In this document: piece after piece, positions 12,101 through 64,000 of the stretch
Layout of the letters: every line of letters begins with the position of its first letter
How positions within the stretch are numbered: the stretch's first letter is position 1
From: Macrostomum lignano
Taxonomy: Eukaryota
Reading direction: 5' to 3'
DNA length: 64,000 nucleotides
Assembly (NCBI GenBank): GCA_002269645.1
Contig: NIVC01000672.1
Location: 372,001-436,000 of the forward strand
Position numbers and translations under genes: made by a program
Notes under the pieces: model-generated
What the model was told of the DNA's origin: nothing
Database searches by the model: none
What the model saw: only the letters and a program-made list of their open reading frames with translations

Positions 12101-14653
12101 CCCAACCAGCCTACTGATTGGCTGGCAATATCAGTAGCGAGTAACGGGGCTTAAATGGGAAAATCCTCGGGAGCAATAAATAAATTGCTTGCTTTGATGC
12201 GGCTGTTTCGTTTGGTTGCGGCTGAGGTTGAGGGGCCGAGACGCTTCGTTTCTTAGAAAATATTTGAAAACTCAATTTAAGTTTCTTAGAAAATATTTGA
12301 AAACTCAATTTAAGTTTCTTAGAAAATATTTGAAAACTCAATTTACGTTTCTTAGAAAATATTTGAAGGCTCGATTTACGCTTAAGATTAATTGCAGAGA
12401 TATCAAACCTTTAAAGTAATCTTTCTGCTGGTACAAATATGCAGCTAAGACAGCTTAAGTCTTTCTAAGAAACGAACGTCTGACCCAGTCACTCAGCCAG
12501 TGAAGGCCGCCAGTTGCTAATCAGTGCCTCGCATTTGCGCAGGCAGCTGCCGCCTCACGAGCGCATCGTCCCCGTGCTGGGCGTCGTCACCAACTATGCC
12601 TATGGCGGCGGCGGGGTCGGCAGCGGCGACGGCGGCCTCACTGACTCCGAGATCTGCGTGCTCGGCGCCTCAGCCGCAGCCTCGCCGGAGATTCTCATCA
12701 TCTCGGAGCTGATGGGCTGCGACCTGCACCGCGCCATTCAGTTCGGCTCGCTCAGCTTCGCTGCCAGGTGACACCGCAGTGCCACCGACAGCCCGTGCCG
12801 CTCCTCATGATTGCCGCTCCCGCATGTCCCCGCGATTGCCAATACTGCCTGCTTGCATCCCATCCTGATCCCATCCTGATCCCATCCTGATCCCATCCTG
12901 ATCCCATCCTGATCCCATCCTGATCCCATCCTGATCCCATCCTGATCCCATCCTGATCCCATCCTGATCCCATCCTGATCCCATCCTGATCCCATCCTGA
13001 TCCCATCCTGATCCCATCCTGATTCCACCCTGCTACCATCATCAGCCTCCCACCTTGATCATATCCTCAGCCTCTCACCCTGATCCCATCCTGATCCCAT
13101 CCTGATCCCATCCTGATTCCACCCTGCTACCATCATCAGCCTCCCACCTTGATCATATCCTCAGCCTCTCACCCTGATCCCATCCTGATCCCATCCTGAT
13201 CCCATCCTAATCCCACCCTGATACCACCCCGATCCCATCCTGATCTCACTCTGATCCCATCCTCAGCTACCCACTCTGATCCCATCCTGATCCGACCCTG
13301 ATTCCACCCTGATCCCATCCTGAGCTTCCCACCTTGATCCCATCCTCAGCATCCCACCCTGATCATATCCTCAGCCTCTCACCCTGACCCCATCCTGATC
13401 CCACCCTGATCCCATCCTCAGCCTCCCACTCTGATCCCATCCTGATCCCACCCTGATCCCATCCTGATCCCACCCTGATCCCATCCTGATCCCACCCTGA
13501 TCCCATCCTGATCCCACCCTGATCCCATCCTGATCCCATCCTGATCCCATCATGATCCCATCCTGTTCCCACCCTGATCCATCCTGATTCCACCCTGATC
13601 CCATCCTGATCCCATCCTCAGCCATCGCACAAATTCCCCTCCAGACTACAGGTGGCCTGCGACGTGGTGGAGGGCATCCGGTTCCTGCACAGCCGCGGCC
13701 TGGTGCACCGAGACGTCAAGCTGAAGAACGTGCTGCTGGACAGGCGCAGCCGCGCCAAGCTGACGGACCTCGGCTTCTGCAAGCCGCACGCCATGATGAG
13801 CGGCAGCATCGTGGGCACCCCGATCCACATGCCGCCCGAGCTGTTCACCGGCAACTATGACTCATCGGTGCGCCTGCGGCTTTGTGTTGGAGTTGTTTGG
13901 GGTGCTGACCCAGCTATGACTCATCGGTGCGCCTGCGGATTTGTGTTGGAATTGTTTGGGGTGCTGACCCTGCTATGACTCATCGGTGCGCCTGCGGCTT
14001 TGTGCTGGAGTTGTTTGGGGTGCTGACCCTTGATGCGGGACTGATTTTCTTGTACAAATCAGCTCCATATCTGGCACAGTCAGCTCCATATCTGGCACAA
14101 TCAGCTCCATATCTAGCACAATCAGCTCCATATCTGGCACAATCAGCTCCATATCTGGCACAATCAGCTCCATATCTGGCACAATCAGCTCCATATCTGG
14201 CACAATCAGCTCCATATCTGGCACAGTCAGCTCCATATCTGGCACAATCAGCTCCATATCTGGCACAATCAGCTCCATATCTCACACAGTCATGCTGCAA
14301 TTCCAAGCACTCCCCAACCGCAGGTGGATGTGTACGCCTTTGGCATCCTGTTCTGGTATGTGTGCGCCGACACGGTGCGCCTGCCGCACAACTTCGAGCA
14401 GTGCAGCAGCAAGGACGCCCTGTGGAGCTCCGTGAAGCGCGGCGTGCGGCCGGAGCGGCTCCCGGCCTTCACCGACCAGTGCTGGGACCTCATGCGGCAC
14501 TGCTGGGACGGCCTTCCCGACCGCCGCCCGCTACCCGGCGACCTCCTGCCGACCCTGCAGGCCCTGCTGGCAGAGGCTCGGGCCGCCCCCGCCTCCTCCG
14601 CCTGCCAGGCCGGCGGCCCGCCATCCGGGCACCTCGTCAGCGACTTGCTGTGA
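6166..14653 (+). CDS. DSTYK: Dual serine/threonine and tyrosine protein kinase (Dusty/RIPK5), 9 coding exons, about 918 aa
   Basis: Exons with GT/AG boundaries and consistent phases: 6166-6319, 6815-6994, 7176-7884, 8351-8822, 9776-10082, 11023-11179, 12543-12767, 13645-13867, 14324-14653 (2757 nt). The translation matches DSTYK as I recall it: [130 protein letters not shown]. Confidence 0.95.
7913..8310. repeat. 22-bp minisatellite (CTGTTCCTGACCCACTGACTCG) in DSTYK intron 3
   Basis: Tandem units are directly visible, with higher-order variants. Confidence 0.9.
8861..9755. repeat. 19-bp minisatellite (TGTGTCTGTCCTGACTGGC) in DSTYK intron 4
   Basis: Tandem units are directly visible. Confidence 0.95.
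10063..10979 (+). repeat. 25/23-bp minisatellite (GGGACATGACTCT[CT]ATGGTGAGCT) built from the DSTYK exon 5/intron 5 junction
   Basis: 38 ATG|GT(G/A)AG copies counted from 10083 to 10970; the first is the true donor. Confidence 0.95.
11180..11700. repeat. Degenerate 20-bp minisatellite (GTGAGCTCATGTGACTCTGT) starting at the intron 6 donor
   Basis: Tandem units visible; a 40-bp higher-order unit is present at 11330-11560. Confidence 0.85.
11922..12068 (+). CDS. DSTYK: Alternative DSTYK exon 7a (paralog of exon 7b, 12543-12767), kinase subdomains IV-VIa
   Basis: GC-rich 147-nt block flanked by ccccaag| and |gtggcg, phase 2/2 like exon 7b. Encodes [49 protein letters not shown], collinear with exon 7b and with the equivalent DSTYK segment. 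Confidence 0.75.
12247..12380. repeat. 33-bp AT-rich tandem repeat, about 4 copies, between exons 7a and 7b
   Basis: GTTTCTTAGAAAATATTTGAAAACTCAATTTAA repeated. Confidence 0.9.
12856..13620. repeat. 11-bp minisatellite (GATCCCATCCT) in DSTYK intron 7
   Basis: Tandem units are directly visible. Confidence 0.95.
13855..14030 (+). repeat. 59-bp repeat x3 containing the exon 8 3' end and donor (CTATGACTCATCG|GTGCGC)
   Basis: Donor copies at 13868, 13927 and 13986. Confidence 0.9.
14057..14290. repeat. 21-bp minisatellite (TCAGCTCCATATCTGGCACAA) in DSTYK intron 8
   Basis: About 11 tandem units. Confidence 0.95.
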
Positions 14654-14689
14654 CGCCCGGGCTGAACTGGACACCCCATCATCTGGATA

Positions 14690-15572: not shown

Positions 15573-15930
15573 GTGAGTGAGTGAGTGAGTGAGTGAGTGA
15601 GTGAGTGAGTGAGTGAGTGAGTGAGTGAGTGAGTGAGTGAGTAAGTGAGTGAGTGAGTGAGTGAGTGAGTGAGTGAGTGAGTGAGTGAGTGAGTGAGTGA
15701 GTGAGTGAGTGAGTGAGTGAGTGAGTGAGTGAATGAGTGAGTGAGTGAATGAGTGAGTGAGTGAGTGAGTGAGTGAGTGAGTGAGTGAATGAGTGAGTGA
15801 GTGAGTGAATGAGTGAGTGAGTGAGTGAGTGAATGAGTGAGTGAGTGAGTGAGTGAGTGAGTGAGTGAATGAGTGAGTGAGTGAGTGAGTAAGTGAGTGA
15901 GTGAGTGCCTGCGTGCGTGAGTGAGTGAGT
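15573..15930. repeat. (GAGT)n microsatellite
   Basis: Directly visible. Confidence 0.97.
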
Positions 15931-17169: not shown

Positions 17170-18375
17170 TTTAATGATGTTGAGTGGGACTGGGAAGATT
17201 AATGCTGAGTGGGGAGTCGGGGACTGAGGGAAATGATGCTGAGTGGCACTGAGGGAAATGATGCTGAGTGGCACTGAGGGGAATGATGCTGAGTGATACT
17301 GAAGGGAATGATGCTGAGTGATACTGAAGGGAATGATGCTGAGTGGCACTGAGGAGAATGATGCTGAGTGATACTGAGGGGAATGATGCTGAGTGATACT
17401 GAGGGAAATGATGCTGAGTGACACTGAGGGGAATGATGCTGAGTGATACTGAAGGGAATGATGCTGAGTGGCACTGAGGGGAATGATGCTGAGTGGCACT
17501 GAGGGGAATGATGCTGAGTGATACTGAAGGGAATGATGCTGAGTGGCACTGAGGGGAATGATGCTGAGTGGCACTGAGGGGAATGATGCTGAGTGATACT
17601 GAAGGGAATGATGCTGAGTGGCACTGAGGGGAATAATGCTGAGTGGCACTGAGGGGAATGATGCTGAGTGATACTGAAGGGAATGATGCTGAGTGACACT
17701 GAGGGGAATGATGCTGAGTGGCACTGAGGGGAATGATGCTGAGTGGCATTGAGGGGAATGATGCTGAGTGATACTGAGGGGAATGATGCTGAGTGGCACT
17801 GAGGGGAATGATGCTGAGTGGCACTGAGGGGAATGATGCTGAGTGGCACTGAGGGGAATGATGCTGAGTGGCACTGAGGGGAATGATGCTGAGTGATACT
17901 GAGGGAAATGATGCAGAGTGACACTGAGGGGAATGATGCTGAGTGGCACTGAGGGGAATGATGCTGAGTGGCACTGAGGGGAATGATGCTGAGTGATACT
18001 GAAGGGAATGATGCTGAGTGGCACTGAGGGGAATGATGCTGAGTGGCACTGAGGGGAATGATGCTGAGTGATACTGAGGGGAATGATGCTGAGTGACACT
18101 GAGGGGAATGATGCTGAGTGGCACTGAGGGGAATGATGCTGAGTGGCATTGAGGGGAATGATGCTGAGTGATACTGAAGGGAATGATGCTGAGTGACACT
18201 GAGGGGAATGATGCTGAGTGGCACTGAGGGGAATGATGCTGAGTGGCATTGAGGGGAATGATGCTGAGTGATACTGAGGGGAATGATGCTGAGTGATACT
18301 GAGGGGAATGATGCTGAGTGATACTAAGGGGAATGATGCTGAGTGATACTGAGGGGAATGATGCTGAGTGACACC
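17170..18375. repeat. 25-bp minisatellite (GAGGGGAATGATGCTGAGTGGCACT)
   Basis: Directly visible; the long ORFs it generates are repeat artefacts. Confidence 0.97.
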
Positions 18376-18721
18376 TAAATATTTGATATACTACATTTAT
18401 ATTTATATTTATATTTATATTTCGATATAAATATTACATATTTCCCTAAACATTCGACTTTAACTAAAACGAACCAAAACTCGCTTCGCTTGAAACCCCA
18501 AGGCGAGAGAAAACTCAAATCCAAAATTTGAAGTCGCAAAAGCAATGTTAGCAAGTTTTCAAATCGCATATGGATTTAAATAATGAGAATTTCACATAAC
18601 TTAATGTCAGTGCGACAGCAACAAGTCGATCTTGTCAGGTACAACTTGCTCATGTACCATTCCTGAAGCAATTTAAGCTACTCGGCTTTCTTTTCTTTTT
18701 CTTTTCCTGGTTCTGCTGCTG

Positions 18722-20269
18722 CTATTGGCTCTGCTGTTGTTGCTGAACTGCTTTACCAGCTGCTCTCTGCTCAGCCGGAGCCAGGAAAAACTTTTTGTCC
18801 ATTCGCACCAGCCAGGAGGACACCTGCCGCTTATCGGCTGAATTTTTGTGCGCCATTTCGTAATTGACTCGCTCGATCATGGACACGACGTCTTCTTTAT
18901 TACCGAACTGCTGGAACACCGAGCATAGCGAAGTGATGAATCGAGACCCCTTTGACCCCTCTCTCGCACTCGTCTCTAGTGGCACAGTCGAGTGCGCCAC
19001 AATGACGTCCTCGTATTCAGGCAGAGGTTCGCGCTCGTTTTTCTCGTCCGACACACCGACGCTATGGTTGCGACACACCTGGAAAATCAGCAGCTTCGGT
19101 TTACCGGTTCTTTTTCCGGCAAACTTTTGTAGAATATCTTTTTCTTTTGCATCATCATCGTCGCATCCGTACAGGTATCCTACTATACCGTGAGTCATTA
19201 GTACAAGAATAGCTGCGTCATCTTTTAACTCCAAATAACGTATTTCTTTCCCAGTCAGATTGGTTCTGATTGAAACACTGAATCCCAATTCAGTGAACAC
19301 TTTTAACAGTCTCTGAGTGTCTTTCTCGGAACCCAAGCGATTGCCATGTCTGCCGAATATGAGATTGTTGATGATGAGCACGCGGGTGCTGGGATCGGCA
19401 GTTGAATACCTTTGTTCCTTACCTGTCTGCGTCAGCTTCCACAGTGCCTCGCTGCTGCTTTCTCTCTCTTCTCTACTAGAGCACTTCGGCACGGGTATTT
19501 CCGGCTCGATTTTGATTTCACAGTGAAATTTAGCCAAGCCGCAGTTTTTGCAAACTTTCTTCTCTAACAATTTGTCTTTGCAGTGGACGCAATCTTTGCA
19601 TTTCACGCAGATCAGCGGTGTGTGAGTTTCTCTCATGCCTTTGCACGTCTTCTTGCAAGTGCAGTCAGTGGCTGCCAAATTGATAGTACAAGAACACAGC
19701 GTGACTGGCTCTTTTGGCTTTTTTGACTCTTCTGATTCTTTAAAATTATCGAGGAGTTGATTAATTAACTGAAAATGATTCTCAGTTTTAATCCAAACGT
19801 CATGTTCGTCAATTTTTCTAAAGTTGTAAATCGTTGAGCCTGGCTCTGATTGGCTTTGACTGGTTCGTGGTGCCTCTCTCTGATTGGCTGGTCTCTGATC
19901 TCTAATCTCTGATTGTACCTCGTAGCTAGCGACTACAACTGCATAATTTGAAATGTCCGGTGCCTGGATTTCTCCATATTCAGCGCGCACTTCCCATCCA
20001 TTTGTCTCCAGAGCAATGCGGAGTCCATCAATTTTCTTCTGCTTCTGCGTTTCGTACGTTGAATTCCCATCCTTCTTGACAAGGATGAGAGCCGTTGGAG
20101 GTTCCTTGGGTGCTAAAATTTTAAACAGAATTACTGTAGATGCGAATCAACAAAGTTCTGAATAAAATCAAATTTTGCCTTACGTTTGGTGTCTGATTTC
20201 TTTGATGGCACTGAAATGAAATCAACAGGAAGGTTTAAAATTAAAAAAATATATATATTTATGCTTACT
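18722..20269 (-). CDS. Caspase-like protease type A, copy 1 (A1): N-terminal alpha/beta domain + Cys/His-rich linker + caspase domain with intact dyad, about 472 aa
   Basis: Caspase motifs RVLIINN, NRLGSEKD, LFTELGFSV-like (KVFTELGFSV), ILVLMTHG (His), KPKLLIFQVCR (Cys), TSAR..GSRFI. Proposed model: 20269 (the A of ATG), 20184-20210, 18722-20112, with canonical GT-AG introns; N-terminus MPSKKSDTKPPKEPPTALILV. Confidence 0.85.
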
Positions 20270-20394
20270 AGAGTAGATATAGGAAATATTTGTTGGAAAT
20301 GTGAGATAATTCAATTTTATCTGGCTAACTTTTATCTGTTTCTACATGTTAAACATTCGTTTTTTAATAAATCTTCAACCTCCAATTCTGGCTC

Positions 20395-20567
20395 ATGAAA
20401 TATTTTCGACTATTCGCATGACGCGCGTATGACAGCTACTGTTGAATTCTATGTGCGTAGCAGCTGTGATTTTATGAGTTCGTAAGTGATTTGATCTGTA
20501 CTTATATGGGCGCTATTCTGAGTACCTTGTCCAAAGAAATGTTACGATATACAATACACTAACATGT
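20395..20567. promoter_or_regulatory. Conserved non-coding block immediately downstream of each B gene (also about 39950-40135 and about 56255-56445)
   Basis: About 180 bp of near-identical sequence in three copies. It could be the B 3' UTR, the promoter of the next gene, or an intercistronic element; function is inferred only. Confidence 0.35.
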
Positions 20568-22261
20568 TCAGTTCATGTAAAAGTCTATCCTGAACAGAAC
20601 ACAATGTATACATGACAGTTCAACTGTAAATTTACCGTTTTTCTCGTCAAGAAAGAATTCATCAGTTGTCTGCACAATCCAGTACGGGAGAAGCAGATTA
20701 TTTTCAACATTTTGATCCGCAAAGTTCGCGCAAAGTTTGTTTGAAAAGCCGTTCTTGACGATGCTGTTGATGGGGCAGATCATTGAAGCCACATCTGTGT
20801 TGCCGGCACCGAAGTAAATTGCTGAGCACAGAGCGAGCACGAAGCGGCTACCCAGGGGGGAACGACCATCAGCAGGGGTTGATTCAGATCTGACTATGAT
20901 CAGACCGCTTTGTTTGTGAAAGTGCAAGTCTGGAGTTGGACCATCAGACGCTGAATCAGTAACTTCCCCTGCAGTTCGATCATCCATGGTAATCACATCT
21001 AAGCGCTCTCGCAGATGAACAACAACCAGCCTGTGCGAGTTGAAAAAACAACTGCCTTGGCTAATTTTAGTGAGCAGTGTGTTAATTTGAGCTTCTGGGT
21101 CTTTGGTCTTTTCAGCAAGGATTACTACCACATAGGAGGGATTGACATCCTTTGGCGGCGGTTCGAATTTGATCTCATAATTACCTAAATCAACTCCAGC
21201 TTCAGTTTTGCACTGACTATCAGGTGATTTGTAGTTGGCGTGCTCAAGTGCATCTTGCAGATTTGCAACGTCCATCCTTGCACTTCTGCCCAAATCAGAT
21301 TTGTCATCGTCTAGCGATTTGCTCACAAGAATGAGAGCGCGATTCTTGTGTGGTTTGTAAGGTGGTTTTCTGTTTTCTGTGTTTTCAGAAGTGTTTTCTG
21401 TTTTGATATATTTTGGGATTTTTTCTTTCAGACGATTCCTCGAAAACGTAAACCCGGCGCCGCCAGGAATATAGTAGAATTTTCTACTATCGATTTTGTC
21501 TTTAGAGCTCCTACTGAAATTTATAACTGTGTTTTGAAGATTTTCGTTTTCAATTAACATGCCTGCGATCTCGTTTAGCTCACTTTCATCTGTGTCTTCT
21601 TCGTCTTTTTTACTCGTACATAGGAAATTCACGTTTAGTAATATTGCTTGTTGATTCTTTTTGTCACGCAGCTTCTCCTTCAGATCCTTGTTTCCACAAA
21701 CAATCAGAAGTCTTTCCAGCTGACCATTTTCGCCACTATCGAATGCCTCGAATAGAGCCTTAAGTTGATCATCGAGTTCCGAACTGTCAGAATGCACTAC
21801 AAGAACTGCTTGTAGTTTAACTGACTTCTCAGCAGTGAGCAGATTCGTACATTCATCAATGTTATTGCATTCTTTCAACTGAAAATCGCAGTCCTCCAGG
21901 TACTTTTTGAAGTCTGTATTCGATGTGATATTCAAAAAGAATGCCTTCCTGTCTGAAATGCAATTAAAAAAGATTTGCGTTAAAAAGTTTGCGTTTGGGG
22001 CTGAGTATCGGAGCAGTAACGCATCCGGTTCTGCACAAAACACCGTTGCCCCAATCATTCAAGCACATTCTCACCTGTTGAAGTTGTGCTGCTATGTCTG
22101 CAATCCGTAACTGCAATTCAGATTGTTGAATTGGTTGTTAGAATTAGATAGAGGCCGCCAGGACCGGCTAATAGAGAGTTGGGTTGAAGCGTACGTAGCT
22201 CCTCAGCAGGGTCATCAGTGATATACTGTATTATGCATCCATGCTGATGAAAAGCCATCAT
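20568..22261 (-). CDS. Pseudocaspase type B, copy 1 (B1): N-terminal alpha/beta domain + caspase-fold domain lacking the His/Cys dyad, about 495 aa
   Basis: NRALILVS, RSARMDVANL, VVVILAEK (no HG), RLVVVHLRER (no QACR), GSRFVLALC, PYWIVQTTDEFF. Exons 22195-22261, 22075-22110 and 20568-21952; the same exon structure and phases are present in all three B copies. Confidence 0.8.
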
Positions 22262-23074
22262 CAAGCTATTCGTCTCCATACGCAGACTAGAGCTAGTAGT
22301 AATAACTTTAACAGTTATTCAAAATATTTCCATGGCTATGGCGGCGTACCAGAATTAATTTTTACAAAATAGCAACCGCACAAAATTGCTTCTAAATTTG
22401 TCCTACATTGATGACACAGGAACAGTGTTGTAATAGAATGCACTGCTGCTGACACACATTCACTAGAGTAGGCTATGGTTCTACCAGCTAATTACGTAAT
22501 ATAAGCTCTCTATCCTTCCCTGTGTTCCTGACAAGAGTTCATTACACGAAGAGACAATTATCGTCAGCTAAGCTTAAAGCAGGCTTTGCTCGACTTTTGC
22601 TCAACTTCTTGTGAGCTGAATATAACTTCCGGGGCTCCTGCGCCGGAAGGACCTTCTATGCTCTTTGATGCCGTTGAAAAAATGAATCTGCCTTTAGCGT
22701 TCAAAACACAATAGGCGTTGCTTGGATCGAGACAGCCAAACTGCAATAAGCTTTATTTTTCCCCGGAACAGAACCCTCTCTCCTGCGCAAGCACTGCACT
22801 GCTCAAAAATATCTGTAGGAGAGACCCATGCAGCTCAGCCTTGCAGGTTATGGAAACGCGGGAGAGCGCCACCACTGACTGCTGTTGGACCTCTTCACCC
22901 ATTTCTCTCTACCAGGCCCTCTTACTGGACACGCGCTCACGTCACTTCTTAGAAGCACGTCTCCACTAACGAGGTTCAAAAGTCTACTTCTGTTTTCAAC
23001 TTCTCTAACGCTAAAATTTTTATTTATTGAATACTTGTACAAGGAGTAGGTTAGGTTTAAGGCGTGCATGAGAG

Positions 23075-23177
<103 letters not shown>

Positions 23178-23249
23178 TGCAGTCTGCAAATCCCCGACCA
23201 AATTACAGCTGCAGGTAGAGCAGCGCTAAATTTATATAATCGATTGTCT

Positions 23250-23500
23250 TCTTCACAAACACCATCGCCCAATGCAAGTTCTCACCTGTGGCCGCTGGAG
23301 CTGAGATGCTTTGGTTGCGATCCGCTACAAGAGATCCAACTGGAAATCGGAAATCAGATTGTTGAATTGGTTAGAATTGGATAGAGGTCAGGGCTGGCTA
23401 ATAGAGAGATGGGTTGAAGCGCACGGAGCCCCTCGGCATACTGTATGTCTCCATGCTGATGACAGCTGCTAATGAAAGCCATCATCAAGCTCTTCGTCTC
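23250..23500 (-). pseudogene. Relic of B-type exons 1-2 (a second relic lies at about 43500-43750)
   Basis: Reads MMAFISSCHQHGDIQYAEGL then LGSLVADRNQSISAPAAT with the B-type donors/acceptors; the next exon runs into a (CT)n tract. The 43.7-kb copy has an early TAG. Confidence 0.55.
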
Positions 23501-40166: not shown

Positions 40167-41764
40167 TCATGACAGTTCAACTGTAAATTTACCGTTATCC
40201 TCGTCAAGAAAGAATTTGTCAGTTGTCTGCACAATCCAATACGGCAGAGGCATTCCAGTCTTTTGATCGCTTTGATCCTCAAAGTCCCGATAATCCGTTG
40301 AAAAGCCGTTCTTGACGATGCTGTTGATGGGGCAGATCATTGAAGCCACATCTAAGTTGCCGGCACCGAAGTAAATTGCTGAGCACAGAGCGAGCACGAA
40401 GCGGCTACCCAGGAGGGAACAGGCATCAGCAGGGGTTGATTCAGATCTGACTATGATCAGACCGCTTTGTTTGTGAAAGTGCAAGTCTGGAGTTGGACCA
40501 TCAGACGCTGAATCAGTAACTTCCCCTGCAGTTCGATCATCCATGTTAGACGCATCTACGCGCTCTCTCAGATGAACAACAACCAGCCTGTGCGAGTTGA
40601 AAAAACAACTGCCTTGGCTAATTTTAGTGAGCAGTGTGTTAGCTTTCTCGACTTCGGTCTTTTCAGCAAGGATGACAACCACATGGGAAGGCCTGGAATC
40701 CTCTGACGGCTGTTCATTGTTCTCATTTTTGAACAGGTTCTCATATTCTACAGAGTCAAAATCTACAGTGATTGTTTTGCATTGATGAGAACTAAATTTG
40801 GCGTGCTCAAGTGCGTCTTGCAGATTCGTAACGTCCATCCTTGCACTTCTGCCCAAATCAGATTTGTCATCGTGTAGCGATTTGCTCACAAGAATGAGAG
40901 CGCGGTTGCTGTGCGGTTTGCAATTGATTGGGTCCTTAATTTTTAATCTTAGACGACTCCTCACCAATTTAAACTCCGATATACCGTTCAAATATTGGAA
41001 TTCCACCAATTCACCAGCGTTTAGTAAACCCACCGCATTTCTCAGCTCCTCTTGATCACTCAACTTCTCTGCGATTTCATCCAATTCATTTCCCTCTGTG
41101 TCAGGTTTTTTGTATAGAAGGATCACGTTTTTTAATATTTTTTGCCCACTTTGCATATCACGCAGGTTCTCCTTCAACTTTTTTCTTTCACAAACAATCA
41201 GAAGTCTTTCCGACTGATCATTTCCGCTACCATTGAATGCCTCGAATAGCTTCTCAAGTTTTTCATCGAGTTCATAACTGCTAGAATGCACTACAAGAAC
41301 TGCTTGCTTCAGTTTCAGTGATTTGGTAGCTTCGACCGCTTCCTTACATTTATCAATGTCACCAGTTTCCTCCAACTGAAAATTGCAGTCCCTCAGGTAC
41401 TGTTTGAACTTCTCACAGCTTTCTTGGTCGATATTCAATAAGAATGCCTTCCTGTCTGAAATGCAGTTCAAATAGAGCAGTTGCGTTAAAAAGTTTGCGT
41501 TTGGGGCTGAGTATCGGAGCAGTAACGCATCCGGTTCTGCACAAAACACCGTTGCCCCAATCATTCAAGCACATTCTCACCTGTTGAAGTTGTGCTGCTT
41601 TGTCTGCGATCCGTTACTGCAATTCAAACGGTTGAATTGGTTGTTAGAATTAGATAGAGGCCAGGACTGGCTAATAGAGAGATGGGTTGAAGCGTACGTA
41701 GCTCCTCAGCAGGGTCATCAGTGATATACTGTATTATGCCTCCATGCTGATGAAAAGCCATCAT
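40167..41764 (-). CDS. Pseudocaspase type B, copy 2 (B2), about 463 aa
   Basis: Exons 41698-41764, 41581-41616 and 40167-41455; same motifs as B1. Confidence 0.8.
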
Positions 41765-47470: not shown

Positions 47471-47489
47471 GGGACTGATTTTCTTGTAC

Positions 47490-54609: not shown

Positions 54610-55389
54610 CTACTTTCTTTTCTTTTTCTTTTTCTTATTTTTCTTTTTCTGGTTCTGCTGCTGCTGTTGGCTCTGCTGTTGTTGCTGAACTGCTTTACCA
54701 GCTGCTCTCTGCTCAGCCGGAGCCAGGAAAAACTTTTTGTCCATTCGCACCAGCCAAGAGGACACCTGCCGCTTATCGGCTGAATTTTTGTGCGCCATTT
54801 CGTAATTGACTCGCTCGATCATGGACACGACGTCTTCTTTCTTACCGAACTCCTTGAACACCGAGCATAGCGAAGTGATGAATCGAGACCCCTTTGACCC
54901 CTCTCTCGCACTCGTCTCTAGTGGCACAGTTGAGTGCGCCACAATGACGTCCTCGTATTCAGGCAGAGGTTCGCGCTCGCTTTGCTCGTCCGACACACCG
55001 TCGCTATAGTTGCGACACACCTGGAAAATCAGCAGCTTCGGTTTATCGGTTCTTTTTCCGGCAAACTTTTGTAGAATATCTTTTTCTTGTACGTAAGCAT
55101 CGTCGGATCCGGACTGGTGTCCTATTATACCGTGAGTCATCAGTACAAGAATAGCAACGTCTTCTTCTAAGACCAAATGACCTATTTTTTCACGAGTCAG
55201 ATTGGTTCTGATTGAAACACAGAATCCCAATTCAGTGAACACTTTTAACAGTCTCTGAGTGTCCTTCTCGGAACCCAAGCGATTGCCATGTCTGCCGAAT
55301 ATGAGATTGTTGATGATGAGCACGCGGGTGCTGGGATCGGCAGTTGAATAGCTTTGTTCCTCACCTGTCTGCGTCAGCTTCCACAGTCT

Positions 55390-55458
<69 letters not shown>

Positions 55459-56084
55459 CACAGTCTCGCTGCTGTTTTCTCTCTCTTCTCTACGAGAGCA
55501 TTCCGGCACGGGTATTTCAGGATCGACTTTGATTGCACAGTGAAATTTAGCCAAGCCGCATTTTTTGCAAACTTTCTTCGGTGACGATTCTTTAAGATTG
55601 TCTCCACAGCGGACGCAATCTTTGCAGTTGACGCAGATCAGTGGTATGTGACTTGCACTGTCTTTGCACGTGTCCTTGCAACTGCAGTCAGCGGCCGCCG
55701 AATCGACGGCTGCCGAATCGACAGCACAAGAGCACAGCGTGACTGGCTCAGATTTTTCAAAATTATCGAGGAGTGTTTTTACTCGTATCTTTCGCTTCTG
55801 ATCCTCATTAGTTTCAATTTTAATCCAAACGTCACCATGTCCGTCAATTTGTTGAAAGTCGTTATCTAGCTTGTCGCTAGCAACTACAACTGCATACTGC
55901 GAAGTGTCTGGTACTTGGATTTCTCCATACTCGTATTCAGCGTGCACTTCCCATCCATTCGCCTCCAGAGCAATTTTCTTCTGCTTCTTTTTCAGCGTTT
56001 CGTTCGTTGAATTCTCTGAATCCTTCTTGACAAGGATGAGAGCTGAATGACGTTTGGTTTCCGATGATGGTGGCTTTGATTGAT
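54610..56084 (-). CDS. Caspase-like protease type A, second copy (A3, in the duplicated block), with a poly-Ala insertion and a Lys-rich tail; start codon not identifiable
   Basis: MTHG and QVCR are intact and the frame is open from the acceptor at 56084. The spliced A|TG start of A1 reads A|AT here. Confidence 0.75.
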
Positions 56085-56473
56085 CTGAAATGAAATCAAC
56101 GGCAAGGTTGAAAAGTTTTAAAAAGATTTTAATTTATGCTTACTAGTCTAGATATAGGAAATTTTATCTGTGTAGATAATAGATAGGCTAAATTTTATCT
56201 GTTTCAACATGTTAACCATTAGGTTTTTAATTAATCTTCAACCTCCGATCCTGGCTTATTGAATATTTCGACTATTTGCATAACTGCGCGCATTACTAGC
56301 TACTGCTCAATTCTATGTGCGTAGCAGCTGTGATTTTATGAGTTCGTAAATGATTTGATCTGTACTTATCTGAGCGCCATTATGTGTACCTTTTCCAAAG
56401 AAATGTTACGATATACAATACACTAACATGTTCAGTTCATGTAAAAGTCTATCCAGAATGGAACATAATGTAG

Positions 56474-59400
56474 TCATGACAGTTCAACTGTAAATTTACC
56501 GTTATCCTCGTCAAGAAAGAATTTGTCAGTTGTCTGCACAATCCAGTACGGCAGAGGCACTTTAATATCTTTCTTGCTTTGTTCCTCAAAGTTCTGATAA
56601 GCCGTTGAAAAGCACGCGAAGGCGTATTCAGCATGCCAGTGAAGTATGAGACAGACTAGGCCCATGGGCTAAGGTCTGCGATGCTTCACGCCTGCCCCTA
56701 TCTTCAGCAGGTCAAGGCTGGTGGGAGGTCTGCACCCTCTATTTGCCTCTGGCAGCCGCAGACCCCCCCCCCACGCTGTCTCGCAAGTCGACCCAGGGTA
56801 CTCGTCCCCGCGTGTGTTCAAGGCAGTCCCTAGGGCTGCTGGACAGACTGGGCTCCGGCGCTGGCGACCCTATCCAGTGGCTTCGGCCGAATTTGGGTAT
56901 GCGGGTCTGGCTCGCCAACCTGCAGGCCGTGGTACTGCTCAACGTACTCTCTAATGCCTAAGGTGTTGACCGTGCCGATGGGCTGGAAGGCCGGGGAGTA
57001 GTCCGGTCGCAAGCGGTCCCCCTCCTGGTGTCGGGCCAGCCTTGAGGGTGCTATTGGCCTACTGCCCGGTCAGGTGGAGCGGCCGGGTGGGTACCGCGCC
57101 CCTTTGAGGGTAGCCCACCAACCTTTTATCATGGCCTTCGAGCCGACTATGGATAAACAAGCTATTTCTAGGGACGGGGACCCTTCTAAACCCCAACCTC
57201 AGTCCGAAGGACCGGCCGGCCCTGCTGGCAGATCCCAACCGACTGATTCAACTGTGGCAAAGGAAGGACCGGCTGGCTCTGCTGGCAGATCCGACCAGAG
57301 CTACCAAACTCAAAATACCCTAAGACCTGCCAGCTCCGCTGGTGGATCTAAGGGAACCGCGAGCTCTGAGCCTAAAGGACCGGCCAAATCTGGCAGATCC
57401 GATGAAGCTCAGCGGGCTCGGCTTGAGCGCAAACGCGCTAAACAACGCGCCAAAAGGCAGGCCAAGAAGGGAGCTGCGGGGGCCAAAGCGGCGGCGTCCA
57501 CCATGGATGCTGAAGCGACTGGAGTCCCAAGGCAACCAGGCGGGCCGGCCGGTGGAAGCTCCAGTAGTTCAGCGGCGGCGCTCCCTGGAGCTGCTGCCGC
57601 GGCTGCTGAGGCCGAAACCACGGCGCAACAAATGGCCACTGCCAACAAGGAGGTTCCTTCGGGAGCTACCTTTGCGGCGAAGGCCAAGGCCAAAATCCCG
57701 GGAGTGATCATCCAAGGTCGCGACCAGGACTGGACCACTGATCAGCTTCAAAAAGTGTGGAGTGCTGTTGACTCCTATCTGATTGAGCTGACTGTCGAGG
57801 AGGGAATCTCCATCGGCGTTGAGCGGATGGTGCTGCGAAGCACATTCGTTCTTATTGCTCCTAGCAGCGAGGAGGACGCTCGGCGGCTGCTCCAGCGGCT
57901 ACCGACGGTCTCCTTGGATGCTGACCTTGGTGGAGCTCTTTTTCTTCGCGAGGGCCAGCGTCCAAAGACGATACCCTATGTGGTTTTCGTCCCTGCTAAG
58001 AGCACCGCAGCTGGACCAGACGTTATTCGCCGGGTCCTACTGCGTCTGAACCCCGACCTCCCTGCTAGTGGACTGGTGTATCACCGCAAAGTCCGCAGGG
58101 GGGAGACGGGCAACTCAATTGTCCTCGGCCTTTCCAGCACTTGGGCGAGTCGGTACCCTAATGGATCCTCTTTCCAGCTGGGTGCCCTCAAGCTCAAGTT
58201 GCGCCGAGGAAAGTCTGCCAAAGGGAAGGCTACTGCCAACCCCGGCATCTCCGGCAAGAGCGGGGCGCAGTCTAAGGCCCAAGGAAAGGCGCAAGCCGAT
58301 CCCAAAGCCAAAGCTGCATCTCGCCCCTCTGCTAGCAGCAGTTCGGCGACCGCGGTAACGGCTCCGGCCGAGCCCCGGGAACCAAACCTGCCAGTCGGAG
58401 AAGGAGTTGAGGACGAGGCCGGGTCTTCGGAATCCGAGCTCTCCTCGGCCACCTTGGTGGGGTCTGAAGGTAAAGATGCAGGTGAGGAAGCTTCCTCCAT
58501 CCTGTCATCGGAGCCTGAGGACTCTGCTGGGGGGCCGGTGGGGGTGAGGAGGCCATGGACGTCGACCAACTCCCATCTCCCAGTCAAGCCCCAGCGGCCT
58601 GGGACGAGGACGATCTGTTGTCCAAGTCTCCTTGATGGCCCTGGGCTCTAGCCAGATATTGCATTTAATACAGTATGACTAAGCTCCACGCTGCCAAAGG
58701 AGCGACATTCTGTCTGCAAATAAATTTACAGCATTGCGTATCTGCGTCAGTAAATCTGATGAAGATTGCTGAGCTGTACAGGCCAGGCCTCATCCTGATC
58801 CAGGAACCCTGGATGCGCAACGGTAAGTTGCCCAACATTCCCTCTGGCTACTCTGATTTTTATGTGTGTGGCCCGGGGAACAGCCGCCCTAGAGCGGCTA
58901 TCCTCGCTGCTAGCCATCTCCAGGCTTGGCTGAGGACTGATCTCTCTGATGGAGACCTTTGCGTCATCCAATCTAATCATTTCTCTCCGCGTACGTGTCT
59001 TGTTGCCTCGGTTTATATCCCAGGCGACAGAGACCCTGCTCCGAGAGTTTACTGCGCCTTGCGCAGTACTGCGAGTCCCAGAACGCTGAGCTGTGCTTAG
59101 GGGGCGACCTCAACGCGCACCACAAGCACTGGGGCAGCAAAGATACCAACACTAGAGGAGAGGAGCTTCTGGCCCTCATCTCTAACACAAACCTCATGCT
59201 CTGCAACCGCGGCAGCACTCCTACCTTTAATAATGGCAGATGGACCGAGGTCCTCGACGCCACACTCGTTACCCCAAGACTCTTTGACAGAGTCAAGGAG
59301 TGGAGAGTCTGGTCTGAGGAGCCCTCCCTGTCTGACCACTGCTTTATCGCCTTTAATATCGCGGACACTAAAACCCAGTCTCCGATCACTTGGAGACGCA

Positions 59401-62400
59401 ATATCCGCAACACTGATTGGGCGGCCTACAAGGCTGCCCTTGATCTGCACCTGCAGGAACTCACGGACTTACGTCCGATTGAGACCTGCGAGGATGTGGA
59501 TCATATGGCTGAGACGCTGACAGGTTGCATTATTGCAGCCTACGAAGCGGCTTGTCCTGCTCGCGCCTACAGAGGCAAGACCTCGGCGCCGTGGTGGAAC
59601 CCGGAGCTGGGGAAACTCAGGCGGAAGGCCAAAAGCCTTCATCGCCGTGCCATGAAGACCGGAAACCCGGAGGACATGGAGCTTTTCCGGCAAGCCTCCC
59701 GCAATTTCAAATCTGAAGTGCGCAAGGCCAAGGAATGTAAGTGGCGCCAATTCTGCAATGAATTGGATCAAGACAGACCTACTTCTAGGCTTGTCAAGGC
59801 CCTTACAATGGACAAAATGTCCAAATTAGCCATGATAAAAAAGATGATGGCTCTCTTACTAAAGACCCTGAAGAAGTGCTTCAGCATATGCTTAGCACAT
59901 TCTTCCCGAGGGTACCTACTGCTAGACCGGAGCCCAACCATTCGATGGATGGAGCCACCCTAGCGGCGGGCATTGTCACTGAAGACCTAATCGCTCGTGC
60001 GGTCAGAACCTTCAAACCCTTCAAATCTCCTGGACCTGATGGTATCTACCCTGTTCTCCTTCGTGAAGCAGCCAAGATACCCTCGTTCCTGAGACTCACC
60101 CGCAATCTTATGCGGGCCTCTATCCAGCTGGGATACGTTCCCAAAAGCTGGACTGAAGCTCGAGTAGTCTTTATTCCCAAACCTGGGAAGGGTGACTACC
60201 AAAGCGTCAAGGCCTTCCGGCCAATTAGCTTAACGTCAGCAATGCTTAAGCTCACTGAGAGGCTTATTCTCTGGCGGCTGCTCTCCTGCGAGCTGACAGC
60301 GATGCCCCTCAGCAATAATCAGCACGCCTTCCGTACCGGGAGGTCGACTGACAGCGCCCTGCATGCGATTGTCGAAAAGATTGAACGGGCGGTACTGGGT
60401 GACGGTTACGCCCTGGCTCTCTTTCTTGACATTGTTGGCGCCTTCGACAACGTTATCTTTGAAGCGTTTCAGAGGGCCCTTCAAAATCGCAAAGCTCATG
60501 CTACCCTCATACGGTGGATCATGTACATGATCTCCAACCGTACGGTCACTGCCCAACTTCTTGGGCAAACTGCCTCCACCAGAGTCTGTAAGGGTGGACC
60601 CCAAGGCGGAGTCCTCACCCCGACGCTCTGGAACCTGGTCATGGACGCTCTTCTGAGTGACTCCCGACCTGACCCCGTCTTCAAAGTCGGGTATGCTGAT
60701 GACGTCACGGCCATTGTGGCAGGACCGTCTCCCAGCACGCTCAGGGATCTGATGCAGAGCTTTATCCGCAAAGCAGAATCCTGGGCCAATGACAATGGTT
60801 TGGAACTCTCTGAGCCCAAAACCGTTGCCATTATGTTTACCAGCAGACTACGCTGGAACATACGTCCTCTGCAGCTCTACGGCAGAGATATTGCCTTCGC
60901 GCACCAGACCAGATGTCTCGGGGTCACACTTGACCACCGGCTCAACTGGTCCTTCCACGTGAAAGCAAAAGCTAAGCGTGCCTCAGCCATCCTGGCCCAG
61001 CTCCGACGAGCACTTGGCACTTCTTGGGGTCTATCCCCAAAGCGGCTTTGGTGGATCTATACTTCCGTAGTTAGACCTGCCATTACGTACGCCTCTGTTG
61101 TCTGGGTTAGCGCTACCCAGGTCAAAAGCCATGCAGACCTGCTCAACACGATCCAAGGCAGAGCGTGTAGGCTCATCTGCAACGCCACCAGGTCCACGCC
61201 CTTTGCTGGCATGGGGGCCTTTCTTAATCTTCCGCCTCTTGACCTCTTCATCAGGGGTGAGGCGGCTAGAACGACGCGGCGTCTAATTGATGCCGGCGTC
61301 AAATTCATTTACATGAGAGCACCTGCTAAGCGGAACCTTGTCCCGCATAGCGATCTGTGCCTCAACTTTCTCAACGAGTGTCAGGCCAATCGCGTCTTCA
61401 CCGATGGCATTGCCTCAACGCTCAACCTGAGACAGCGCTACTCCGTAGCTATCGACTCGCGCGATAACATCAATGACCATTGGAACCCTGGTGAGCTTCA
61501 TTGCTACACCGACGGTTCTAAGCAGTCAGCCAACACCGGCTTTGGTGTTGGAATCTTTCTGAACGGGAGGGTCATCGCTACCCACGCTCAATACACTGGG
61601 GTCAACTCCAGTGTTTTCCAAAATGAAGTTCTGGCCATCAGCTCCTGCACTGCAGAGCTTCTCGCCACTGGCGTTACTGGTAAGAACATCATTTTCCATT
61701 CGGACAGCCAAGCTGCCTTGCACGCCATCAGTGGCTGCAGCACCAACTCTGCTACAGTCCTTGACTGTATCAAACTCCTCAATGTGTTGGGTTCCGCCAA
61801 CAAAATTACCCTTAAGTGGGTTCCGGGGCATGTGGGGATCCGAGGAAATGAGTTGGCTGACACCCTTGCAAAAGTTGGTGCCTCCGGCTCCTCTCTCGGC
61901 CCCGAACCTCTTGTCCCGATTCCTGGCTGTGTCATCGACTCGCGCATCAAAGCGTGGATCAGGACTCAGCACCGCTCGACTTGGGCGAACCGCACGAACT
62001 GCAGGCAATCCAGAGGCGCTGTCCCTCAGCCCTCTCACCAGCTCCGGAAGCTCCTCTTGCGCCTCTCGCGCAGAGACATCCGGGCTGCCACCATGACCCT
62101 CTCTGGTCACGGCTGCTTCTCCAGGCACCAGTACCTGCAGGGCAACGCCACCAACGCCACCTGTAGTTTCTGCAACTCAGGTGACGAAACCGCTGAGCAT
62201 TTCGTCAGCATCTGTCCCGCCTTCACGCGGGCCAGACTCACTTACCTCGGGCCACACACATCTATTACTGAAGCGTGCAAACCCGAAAACTTTAATCAGC
62301 TCATGCGCTACCTTCGGGCCACCCGCAGGGCTGAACTCTCCTTTCCAGAGAGCACCATAGCTGCTGGCGACACTGGGGGACCTCCCTGGGCGGCGCCAAC

Positions 62401-63973: not shown

Positions 63974-64000
63974 CAAGCTATTCGTCTCCATAGGCAGAGA

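What the first reader, a model, noticed from the sequence alone, without database searches (positions are those of the whole stretch)
18722..22261. Caspase exons diverge faster than their introns and flanks (signature of diversifying selection)
Flanks such as 18375-18700 vs 54307-54600, and B exons 1-2 with introns, look roughly 90% or more identical by eye. The main exons carry dense amino-acid changes and indels, clustered around the catalytic His in A (GKEIRYLELKDDAA..GIVGYLYGCDDDDAK vs REKIGHLVLEEDVA..GIIGHQSGSDDAYVQ) and across most of B. The co-duplicated DSTYK exons are almost unchanged. This pattern is typical of host-pathogen arms races.
Basis: partly seen in the sequence, partly recalled or inferred. 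Interest (0 to 1): 0.7.

Follow-up and report, generated by a model that had tools for sequence, protein, structure and literature searches.

The report
Fast-evolving flatworm pseudo-caspase/caspase gene copies
Two "caspase genes" are really one flatworm gene (a dead caspase-like half spliced to a live caspase half) present in several copies that keep swapping pieces, and only the dead half shows amino-acid change faster than neutral, so the claimed arms-race signature is only partly real.

Summary
The sequence facts hold. The 3' flank is 94% identical, the block upstream of B 94%, and the co-duplicated kinase exons differ at 7 of 555 bases. The caspase exons carry dense replacements and indels.

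"A" and "B" are two exons of one minus-strand Macrostomum lignano gene. B encodes an α/β domain plus a caspase-like domain without His/Cys. A encodes a Cys-rich stretch plus an active caspase.

The copies are gene-conversion mosaics: the outlier among B1/B2/B3 switches five times (chi2=151, p=3e-26), and a second public locus has the units re-assorted. The B-A intron (K80 0.15-0.16) and synonymous sites (0.13-0.16) are equally diverged, and both exceed the flanks (0.06).

All six A pairs give dN/dS 0.92-1.19, not different from 1. The patch around the catalytic His also clusters synonymous changes and exists as two haplotypes shuffled among copies.

B1 versus B2 gives dN/dS 1.8-1.9 (p=0.001-0.003; bootstrap 1.38-2.52), and its dN exceeds intron divergence (p=0.0005). 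All 9-15 coding indels per pair are in frame.

Copy 2 is broken by a LINE with a 15-bp target duplication.

The parts
21953..22290 (-). Conserved block upstream of B1's main exon. It holds the ATG at 22058 (MIGATVF... leader, or a GTGAGA...TTTCAG intron) and part of a ~160-bp repeated element.
   Evidence: Copy types 1, 2 and 3 are 93.7-95.5% identical to one another, and each type is 100% identical to its L001 counterpart. Identity drops to about 70% right after the TTTCAG acceptor at about 21953. B2 has two 1-bp deletions here.
20636..21952 (-). B1 main exon. N-terminal α/β domain (to about 21345), caspase-like domain without catalytic residues (ILAEKT 21105-21122 in place of MTHG; VHLRER 21003-21020 in place of FQVCRN), p10-like block 20742-20927, and a variable tail. 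The donor G|GTAAAT follows base 20636.
   Evidence: ORF 20568-22058. No Pfam hit. The p10-like part aligns to A (BLASTP 1e-5). hhalign covers 202 columns, E=9.5e-5. The profile hits the caspase domain of P0005 at 1.6e-9. dN/dS vs B2 is 1.8-1.9. Mosaic ancestry is shown.
21693..21812 (-). 40-codon hypervariable segment of B's N-domain (QAVLVVHS..RLLIVCG).
   Evidence: dN 0.19-0.27 against dS 0.02-0.05 in all three B pairs (omega 5-15, p=0.02-0.07 each).
20113..20635 (-). Intron between the B and A exons (GT at 20635-20634, AG at 20114-20113; the split codon is G|CA = Ala).
   Evidence: M. lignano proteins P0001, P0002 and P0008 read FFLDEDN-A-FEPSTTALIL across this junction. Identity to copy 2 is 85.5-86.7%, with indels of 1,1,1,12,1,77 bp.
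18722..20112 (-). A1 exon. Degenerate β-α start, Cys-rich module, and active caspase domain (Pfam 18785-19384; His codon 19190-19192 in MTHG; Cys codon 19073-19075 in FQVCRN). Stop at 18722-18724. There is no Met before residue ~160, so translation depends on the B exon.
   Evidence: Peptidase_C14 at 5e-33. Caspase-3/-7 structures match at E about 1e-19, with the S1 Arg/Gln/Arg aligned. Translation.
19145..19255 (-). Core variable patch of A1. By alignment to caspase-3/-7 it covers helix α2 and the hairpin right after the catalytic His.
   Evidence: 18.5 nonsynonymous and 4.5 synonymous differences in 37 codons. Core-patch dS is 0.21 against 0.028 for the caspase domain outside the wider 83-codon patch. 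Both classes cluster. Two haplotypes are shared with Ax/P0001 and Ay/P0002.
18375..18721 (-). 3' flank of A1 (unique DNA before the 25-bp tandem array 17223-18374).
   Evidence: 93.8-94.1% identical to 54308-54609.
54610..56084 (-). A2 exon (intact ORF, with a poly-Ala tract and a poly-Lys tail).
   Evidence: Peptidase_C14 at 3e-32. A frame-compatible acceptor TTTCAG|AT is present.
56085..56499 (-). Copy-2 B-A intron.
56500..56613 (-). 3' piece of the B2 exon, including one copy of the target-site duplication (56599-56613).
56614..62508 (+). Full-length non-LTR retrotransposon (LINE), inserted antisense into the B2 coding exon.
   Evidence: 15-bp duplication GCTTTTCAACGGCTT at both ends. Exo_endo_phos_2, RVT_1 and RNase_H domains. 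B1, B3, Bx and By have the empty site.
62509..63666 (-). 5' piece of the B2 main exon (the second target-site copy is at 62509-62523).
40193..41455 (-). B3 main exon, the third copy. The downstream intron homology stops at about 39943 and no A exon follows in the window.
   Evidence: Its near-identical counterpart By in L001 is followed by an A exon.
13643..14653 (+). Last two exons of the convergent protein-kinase gene (k3 13643-13870, k4 14324-14650 plus stop). A duplicated relic lies at 46955-47182 and 48514-48840.
   Evidence: HRD/DLG/PPE motifs. Pkinase at 1e-23. 1/228 and 6/327 differences. Exons k1 and k2 are single copy, and the duplication edge is at 12789.

Best explanation
The interval holds one gene of the flatworm Macrostomum lignano, on the minus strand.

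Gene plan:
- A large 5' exon ('B') encodes a Rossmann-like α/β domain followed by a caspase-like domain that has lost the catalytic His and Cys, i.e. a pseudo-caspase.
- It is spliced over a 523-bp intron to a 3' exon ('A').
- A encodes a Cys-rich stretch and a caspase domain with the His/Cys dyad and the Asp-binding S1 residues intact.

Copies: the unit is tandemly duplicated. The window holds B1-A1, B2-A2 (B2 now split by a LINE) and B3 without an A partner. A second public locus carries Bx-Ax and By-Ay.

How the pattern arises:
- Shown: the paralogues repeatedly exchange sequence by gene conversion and unequal crossing-over. This leaves a patchwork. Recently homogenised blocks are the upstream block, B's p10-like block, most of A's caspase domain with its 3' flank, and the kinase relic exons. 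Old blocks are B's N-domain and pseudo-p20, the intron, A's N-terminal half and the His patch. This explains why some flanks look 'too similar'.
- Shown: in the old coding blocks, amino-acid replacement runs at about the neutral rate in A (dN/dS about 1) and above it in B (B1 vs B2, 1.8-1.9). Reading frames are strictly preserved.
- Inferred: the proteins are functional, and positive (diversifying) selection acts on B's N-domain and pseudo-caspase surface. In A it is a mixture of constrained and free or selected sites.
- Inferred, untested: B acts as a built-in FLIP-like partner or variable recognition module for the active A caspase.

The selective agent (pathogen, sexual conflict or other) is unknown.
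For: Organism and gene model:
- The best hits are M. lignano proteins with stretches 100% identical to B1.
- P0001, P0002 and P0008 read through the B-A junction at canonical GT/AG sites.
- A has no upstream Met.

Domains:
- A matches Peptidase_C14 at 5e-33, and caspase-3/-7 at 1e-19 with R/Q/R, His and Cys aligned.
- B aligns to A and to P0005's caspase domain but has E-K and R at the dyad positions.
- P0006 shows the same tandem plan, with two C14 stretches.

Mosaic:
- The outlier among B1/B2/B3 switches by segment (39:3:3, 34:20:78, 5:33:8, 17:5:4; chi2=151, p=3e-26).
- The A patch haplotypes recombine with neighbouring sites among four copies.
- By is 99% B3-like but has a B1-like 3' end. 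The flank after Ax is 99.7% identical to the copy-2 flank. Unit order differs between L001 and the window.

Rates:
- Intron K80 is 0.147-0.162, about equal to dS of 0.13-0.16. Both exceed the flanks at 0.05-0.07 (p=0.002-0.009).
- B1-B2 omega is 1.82-1.94 (LRT p=0.0009-0.003; bootstrap 1.38-2.52; gap-trimmed 1.74). Its dN exceeds the intron (p=0.0005).
- A pairs give omega 0.92-1.19. A's p10 part gives 0.28-0.5 in some pairs.

ORF maintenance:
- All 9-15 coding indels per B pair, and 11 in A, are multiples of 3. Intron indels are not.
- No stop codon occurs in nine copies.
Against: - Only one B contrast (B1/Bx vs B2) has omega significantly above 1. The other B pairs give 0.74-1.02. About a dozen tests were run, so p of about 0.001-0.003 is only moderately strong.
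- B2 is the LINE-disrupted copy and may have drifted neutrally for part of its history. That can raise omega towards 1 but not above it.
- Recombination violates the single-tree assumption. Pairwise omega is robust to this, but no site models were run.
- B's caspase homology rests on weak scores. The AlphaFold model was poor (pLDDT 48), the PDB profile search found nothing, and the fold search gave only generic Rossmann/flavodoxin/TIR-like hits.
- B-A splicing is inferred from public protein models, and some of these are chimeric between units.
- No expression, population or functional data are available.
Confidence: 0.65

Rival explanations
1. All parts of the duplicated unit are the same age, introns and flanks mark the neutral rate, and both caspase exons (especially the patch around A's catalytic His) have been driven apart by pathogen-imposed diversifying selection.
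For: - B1-B2 omega is 1.8-1.9, and dN exceeds intron divergence.
- A 40-codon segment of B has dN 5-15 times dS.
- Helix α2 next to A's His differs in all four A copies.
- Frames are maintained.
Against: - The parts are not the same age. Tree topology changes along B (p=3e-26).
- Intron and synonymous sites are 2-3 times more diverged than the cited flanks.
- A's omega is 0.92-1.19 and the patch is not significant (p>=0.17).
- Synonymous changes co-cluster in the patch.
- The patch is a two-haplotype dimorphism shuffled among copies.
- Nothing links the locus to pathogens.
Confidence: 0.12
2. Relaxed constraint only. The units are redundant or decaying copies (copy 2 is already hit by a LINE) that drift neutrally. 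Omega of about 1 is neutrality, and the single omega>1 result is noise.
For: - A LINE with target-site duplication sits in B2's coding exon, and B2's leader has two 1-bp deletions.
- B3 lacks an A partner in the window.
- Most pairwise omegas cannot be told from 1.
Against: - No stop codon occurs in nine exon copies despite dN of 0.12-0.28, and every one of dozens of coding indels is in frame while intron indels are not.
- Omega of about 1 also holds among intact copies A1, Ax and Ay.
- A's p10 part and long invariant blocks show constraint, with synonymous change present (omega 0.28, p=0.04).
- B1-B2 omega exceeds 1 with bootstrap P(omega<=1)<0.001.
Confidence: 0.15
3. Assembly artefact. The 'copies' are collapsed or mis-joined haplotypes or homeologues of a neopolyploid genome, so the comparisons are not between tandem paralogues.
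For: - M. lignano is a recent hidden polyploid that is hard to assemble (PMC10733133, PMC5704211).
- L001 shows a different unit order.
- Public gene models here are chimeric.
Against: - Copies differ by 12-25% and by many indels, a LINE and different neighbours. That is far beyond allelic or homeologous divergence (B1-Bx 0.5%, B3-By 2.7%).
- Two independent assemblies both contain several distinct units in tandem.
Confidence: 0.05

Closest known systems
Effector caspases (caspase-3/-7; peptidase family C14A)
   Same: - A's C-terminal 200 residues match Peptidase_C14 and caspase-3/-7 structures.
- His, Cys and the three S1 residues align.
- The layout has p20 and p10 parts in one chain.
   Different: - The active-site motifs are THG and QVCRN instead of SHG and QACRG.
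- There is no CARD, DED or short effector prodomain. Instead there is an ~700-residue N-terminal extension with an α/β domain, a dead caspase-like domain and a Cys-rich module.
- Only about 30% identity, and lineage-specific.
FLIP(L), the vertebrate pseudo-caspase that heterodimerises with caspase-8 (PMC7586951)
   Same: A caspase-fold domain that has lost the catalytic dyad, paired with an active caspase. This suggests regulation through a pseudo-dimer.
   Different: - Here the dead and live domains lie in one polypeptide rather than in two genes.
- There are no DED domains.
- Homology of B is to local flatworm caspases, not to FLIP.
- Interaction between B and A is untested.
Tandem immune or reproductive multigene clusters evolving by birth-and-death plus gene conversion with omega>=1 (general class, from established knowledge)
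   Same: - Tandem copies and a conversion mosaic.
- Structural variation between haplotypes or homeologues.
- In-frame indels.
- Omega around or above 1, and a retrotransposon hit in one copy.
   Different: - No known ligand, pathogen or mating role.
- The fast-evolving part is a pseudo-enzyme and an α/β domain, not a classical recognition repeat.
M. lignano tandem-C14 protein PAA86652.1 (P0006) and N-domain caspase PAA82799.1 (P0005)
   Same: - The same domain plan. P0006 has N-domain, pseudo-caspase (no His/Cys) and active caspase. P0005 has N-domain and active caspase.
- They are the only hits of the B profile among 1.8 billion representatives.
   Different: - Only the p10-like part aligns (E 1.6e-9 and 2e-5).
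- They lie at other loci and are uncharacterised.

Membership tests
Caspase (peptidase C14A), exon A | Peptidase_C14 domain above the Pfam threshold | tested here: met
   A1 scores 115 bits (cut-off 21.4) and A2 112.6 bits.
Caspase (peptidase C14A), exon A | Catalytic His-Cys dyad and S1 Arg/Gln/Arg at the aligned positions | tested here: met
   In the alignment to caspase-3/-7, THG His is at 19190-19192 and QVCRN Cys at 19073-19075. R of NRLG, Q of FQVCRN and R of SAREG align with the Arg/Gln/Arg of caspase-3. All are invariant in four copies.
Caspase (peptidase C14A), exon A | Asp-directed endopeptidase activity | not testable with these tools
   This needs the recombinant protein.
Pseudo-caspase, exon B | Homology to the caspase fold | tested here: inconclusive
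   For: BLASTP to A's p10 part at 1e-5, hhalign over 202 columns at E=9.5e-5 but probability 31%, and a profile hit to P0005's caspase domain at 1.6e-9. Against: no Pfam hit, no PDB hit, and a model with pLDDT 48.
Pseudo-caspase, exon B | Loss of catalytic residues | tested here: met
   ILAEKT stands opposite LMTHGI (the segment is deleted, no His). VHLRER stands opposite FQVCRN (Arg for Cys). This holds in all five B copies.
FLIP orthologue | Tandem DED domains N-terminal to the dead caspase domain | tested here: not met
   There is no DED hit in Pfam. The N-domain is a β-α-β Rossmann-like fold.
Gene under diversifying (positive) selection | dN/dS significantly above 1 | tested here: inconclusive
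   Met for B1/Bx vs B2 (1.8-1.94, p=0.0009-0.003). Not met for the other B pairs (0.74-1.02), for any A pair (0.92-1.19) or for A's His patch (p>=0.17).
Gene under diversifying (positive) selection | Site-specific omega>1 on a recombination-aware phylogeny, or a McDonald-Kreitman excess | not tested
   Only 4-5 copies were available, there are no population data, and no PAML or HyPhy was on hand.
Concerted evolution / interlocus gene conversion | Ancestry changes along the alignment, with tracts crossing coding and non-coding borders | tested here: met
   Outlier switching in B (chi2=151, p=3e-26). Conserved tracts include intron, flank and exon DNA. The A sites form a recombinant mosaic. By carries a B1-like 3' end.
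Pseudogene (unit 2) | Disabling lesions | tested here: inconclusive
   A LINE with target-site duplication lies inside the B2 exon, and the leader has two 1-bp deletions. But the A2 and B2 main-exon frames are open and all indels are in frame.

The most novel reading that the evidence does not exclude
The B-A protein is a single-chain 'pre-paired' caspase. A covalently attached dead caspase domain plays the FLIP-like partner, and it and the hypervariable α/β domain serve as a fast-evolving recognition or decoy surface. The multi-copy, constantly recombining cluster would then be a flatworm innate-immune, or allorecognition/sexual-conflict, sensor family that triggers caspase activity on binding a foreign factor.
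Probability: 0.12. Interest if true: 0.7.

Novelty: new variant of a known kind. Interest (0 to 1): 0.42.

Why it matters
Method: a contrast between 'fast exons' and 'slow flanks' in a duplicated locus is not in itself evidence of selection. Interlocus gene conversion made the flanks young, and the proper neutral yardsticks (intron and synonymous sites) removed the signal for the active caspase.

Biology: M. lignano carries a recombining cluster of genes that fuse a catalytically dead caspase-like domain to a live caspase, and the dead half evolves faster than neutral. If confirmed, this would be an invertebrate counterpart of pseudo-caspase regulation built into one polypeptide. It would also be a candidate rapidly evolving cell-death or immune module in a regenerating flatworm model where extrinsic apoptosis components (FADD, DED caspases) are reported lost or rare (PMC11463336).

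Annotation: public gene models for this cluster are chimeric.

Tried and rejected
- Self-BLAST of the whole window was swamped by tandem arrays, so I restricted it to long-range hits.
- Treating A and B as separate genes was rejected once P0001 and P0002 were seen to read through both.
- My first donor search in L001 and my first B2 coordinates were wrong, and were corrected.
- Two word-index protein searches and one exhaustive profile search found no relatives outside M. lignano for B, and only weak fish caspase hits for A.
- The AlphaFold model of B from a 3-sequence alignment was poor (pLDDT 48). Foldseek gave only generic Rossmann/flavodoxin/CheY/TIR-like matches, so no fold-based function is claimed.
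- The PDB profile search with B found nothing.
- A literature search for the locus tags found nothing. No paper on these genes turned up, only a survey noting unusual M. lignano caspase prodomains.
- I did not run site models, because recombination among only 4-5 copies would make them unreliable.
- I ran no further search on confirming that the kinase is DSTYK. Only the Pkinase domain was verified.
- I did not predict A's structure, because the tool returns no coordinates for mapping sites.
Full report
WHAT IS THERE

The window is eukaryotic. The best protein matches of the ORF at 18722-19990 are Macrostomum lignano 'CASPASE_P20 domain-containing' proteins. Stretches of P0001 are 100% identical to the window's B1 ORF. 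A contig of the M. lignano assembly GCA_002269645.1 (locus L001) is 97.8-99% identical over kilobases. M. lignano is a recent hidden polyploid (PMC5704211, PMC10733133).

On the minus strand the window carries a cluster of caspase-like ORFs:
- A1, 18722-19990 (Peptidase_C14, 5e-33).
- B1, 20568-22058 (no Pfam hit).
- C, 34878-35681 (C14).
- D, 36821-38731.
- B3, 40167-41564.
- A2, 54610-55947 (C14).
- B2, 62507-63769.

GENE MODEL

'A' and 'B' are two exons of one gene. Three public M. lignano proteins read from the end of B (…YWIVQTTDEFFLDEDN) straight into A (A-FEPSTTALIL…). In the window this junction lies at a canonical donor (G|GTAAAT after base 20636) and acceptor (TTTTAG| before base 20112). 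The split codon G|CA gives Ala. The A exon has no Met until just before its caspase domain, so it cannot be translated on its own.

A's C-terminal 200 residues align with caspase-3/-7 structures (E about 1e-19). The catalytic His (THG), the Cys (QVCRN) and the three S1 residues all align.

B ends in a caspase-like domain:
- Its p10-like part aligns with A (BLASTP 1e-5).
- It also aligns with the caspase domain of another M. lignano protein (profile E=1.6e-9).
- A global profile alignment covers 202 columns (E=9.5e-5).
- The His segment is missing (ILAEKT) and Arg replaces the Cys (VHLRER) in all five copies.
- B is therefore best described as a pseudo-caspase preceded by a β-α-β domain. That domain is the only moderately confident part of a poor AlphaFold model, with only generic Rossmann/flavodoxin/TIR-like fold matches.

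P0006, at another locus, has the same plan: N-domain, dead caspase, live caspase, with two C14 stretches.

THE DUPLICATION

Copy 1 (about 12789-23900) matches copy 2 (about 46809-64000). B3 and its upstream DNA form a third partial copy.

Copy 2's B exon is interrupted by a 5895-bp LINE (56614-62508, plus strand) with endonuclease, RT and RNase H domains. A perfect 15-bp target-site duplication flanks it. The other four B copies have the empty site.

The left edge of the duplication (12789) lies in an intron of a convergent protein-kinase gene. Copy 2 therefore holds only that gene's last two exons.

CHECKING THE OBSERVATION

- The 3' flank is 94% identical.
- The 338 bp upstream of B's main exon are 93.7% identical.
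- The kinase exons differ at 7/555 nt, 2 amino acids.
- B1 and B2 are 66% identical in protein, with 12 indels.
- In the A1-A2 caspase domain, nonsynonymous differences cluster in 37 codons around the catalytic His (p=4e-9).

The generalisation fails:
- The only real intron inside the gene (20113-20635) has K80 0.147-0.162. That is more than the A exon as a whole (0.115) and less than the B exon (0.206).
- A's caspase domain as a whole is as similar as its flank (94.2%).
- Unique intergenic DNA at 15932-17222 is only 79-85% identical.
- Divergence is a block mosaic that ignores exon borders.

WHY: GENE CONVERSION

In the three-way B alignment the odd-one-out changes by segment. Counts are sites where B1: B2: B3 is the outlier.

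| Window coordinates (B1) | Outlier pattern | Counts |
|---|---|---|
| 22290-21956 | all alike | 8:12:6 |
| 21955-21810 | B1 odd | 39:3:3 |
| 21809-21360 | B3 odd | 34:20:78 |
| 21129-20940 | B2 odd | 5:33:8 |
| 20939-20745 | all alike | 1:8:5 |
| 20744-20636 | B1 odd | 17:5:4 |

The heterogeneity test gives chi2=151, p=3e-26.

L001 adds four more exon copies (Bx, Ax, By, Ay):
- Bx is nearly B1.
- By is 99% B3-like but has a B1-like 3' end.
- The flank after Ax is 99.7% identical to the copy-2 flank.
- The order of units differs from the window.

In A the hairpin after the His exists as two haplotypes. GIVGYLYGCDDD[D/Y]AK occurs in A1, Ax and P0001. GIIGHQSGSDDA[Y/C]VQ occurs in A2, Ay and P0002. 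Neighbouring variable sites (RT[G/D]K, RN[H/Y]S) group the copies differently, so the arrangement is a recombinant mosaic.

Synonymous differences are also concentrated in the patch. dS is 0.21 in the 37-codon core, against 0.028 for the caspase domain outside the wider 83-codon patch (Fisher p=0.002-0.011). The patch is therefore an older or imported tract, not simply a burst of replacements.

Against proper neutral yardsticks the 'slow' flanks are the anomaly:
- Synonymous p-distance (B1-B2 0.125; A1-A2 0.122) equals the intron's (0.133).
- Both exceed the upstream block and the 3' flank (about 0.06; p=0.002-0.009).

SELECTION

I computed dN/dS with Nei-Gojobori, LWL85, YN00, Biopython ML, my own GY94 likelihood with an LRT against omega=1, and a kappa-weighted counting method with a codon bootstrap.

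Exon A:
- All six pairs among A1, A2, Ax and Ay give omega 0.92-1.19, with confidence intervals spanning 1.
- The N-terminal half gives 0.77-1.73.
- The 83-codon patch gives 0.6-2.1 (p>=0.17).
- The p10 part gives 0.28-0.5 in some pairs (p=0.04 for A1-Ax).

Exon B:
- B1 (and Bx) vs B2 gives omega 1.8-1.94 (LRT p=0.0009-0.003; bootstrap 95% CI 1.38-2.52; 1.74 after removing gap-adjacent codons).
- The N-domain alone gives 2.4-2.9.
- dN exceeds intron divergence (p=0.0005), while dS equals it.
- A 40-codon segment (21693-21812) has dN 0.19-0.27 against dS 0.02-0.05 in all three pairs.
- The other B pairs, which are older (dS 0.27-0.33), give 0.74-1.02.

Reading-frame maintenance:
- Every coding indel is a multiple of three: 12, 15 and 9 events in the B pairs and 11 in A.
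- Intron indels are 1, 1, 1, 12, 1 and 77 bp.
- No copy has a stop codon.

These are therefore not drifting pseudogenes, although unit 2 has recently been hit by the LINE and has two 1-bp deletions in its leader.

VERDICT

The exon-versus-flank contrast is mainly produced by gene conversion and unequal crossing-over that rejuvenated the flanks.

For the active caspase A, including the patch around the catalytic His, there is no significant excess of replacements. The data fit a mixture of constrained sites and free or selected sites on an old, shuffled dimorphism.

For the pseudo-caspase exon B there is moderately strong evidence of replacement faster than neutral in the B1/B2 contrast, consistent with diversifying selection.

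Nothing identifies the agent. Host-pathogen conflict, sexual conflict and other causes all remain open.

The functional model is inferred by analogy with FLIP(L)/caspase-8 (PMC7586951) and is untested. In it, B acts as a built-in dead partner and variable surface for caspase A.

A survey of lophotrochozoan apoptosis genes notes unusual M. lignano caspase prodomains but not this family (PMC11463336). I found no paper on these loci.

Nothing in this work called for a referred step.

Noticed in passing
window 56614-62508 (+); also 36504-36660: A full-length LINE (APE endonuclease, RT, RNase H) is inserted antisense in B2's coding exon, with a perfect 15-bp target-site duplication. Its ORF2 is split into three overlapping ORFs. 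A 157-bp 3' fragment of the same element (98% identical) lies just downstream of gene D.
   Followed up: yes
Yet the orphan exons are 98.7% identical, against about 96% for adjacent unique non-coding DNA (Fisher p=0.008). Either they were converted very recently or they are still used.
   Followed up: partly
window 34878-38731 (-): Two more family members lie between the units. D has an N-domain, a caspase-like domain without His/Cys, and about 35 tandem TGSDK repeats. C'/C are two ORFs 13 bp apart, and C has SHG and QSCRHHG. They may form another dead-plus-live pair.
   Followed up: no
L001 (GCA_002269645.1 NIVC01002099.1, 8768-49057 reversed) vs the window: A second assembly shows a different unit order. 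L001 reads C, Bx-Ax, copy-2-type flank with kinase relic, By-Ay, copy-1-type flank. The window has B3 without an A exon, followed by D and C. This indicates unequal crossing-over between units, or between homeologues.
   Followed up: partly
window 39943-40192: B3 keeps the donor site and about 250 bp of the B-A intron, then homology stops. In this window its A exon has been lost or replaced.
   Followed up: partly
window 22118-22279, 23354-23509, 41631-41800, 43595-43689, 63830-63996: A ~160-bp element (ORF-like 'METNSLMMAFHQHG...') is repeated upstream of every B unit, twice upstream of B1.
   Followed up: no
window 55400-55470 and 54610-54680; 19770-19860: A2 carries a run of about 22 Ala codons and a poly-Lys C-terminal extension. 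A1 has a private 28-residue insertion. All are in frame.
   Followed up: partly
window 17223-18374 and 52943-54307; also 12857-13618, 14057-15133, 15573-15931, 50066-51775: Large tandem arrays (25-bp, 11-bp, 21-bp, 4-bp and 57-bp units) fill the space between the kinase and caspase genes. They generate long spurious ORFs and differ in copy number between the two duplicates.
   Followed up: partly
P0001, P0002, P0008 (public M. lignano proteins); L001 10001-30290: Public gene models in this cluster are chimeric. P0001 mixes B1-type and B3-type segments. PAA60871.1 (P0008) spans 20 kb and joins Bx to Ay across a whole unit. P0002 starts from two small exons at window 43539-43598 and 43122-43211 and enters B at an internal position.
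   Followed up: partly
window 19500-19760 (-), and equivalents in A2, Ax and Ay: A conserved Cys/His-rich module (CSC...DCxCKxxCK...HxPLICVxCKxCVxC...KKVCKxCGLAKF) lies between A's degenerate N-terminal β-α unit and the caspase domain. It has no Pfam match and may bind zinc.
   Followed up: no
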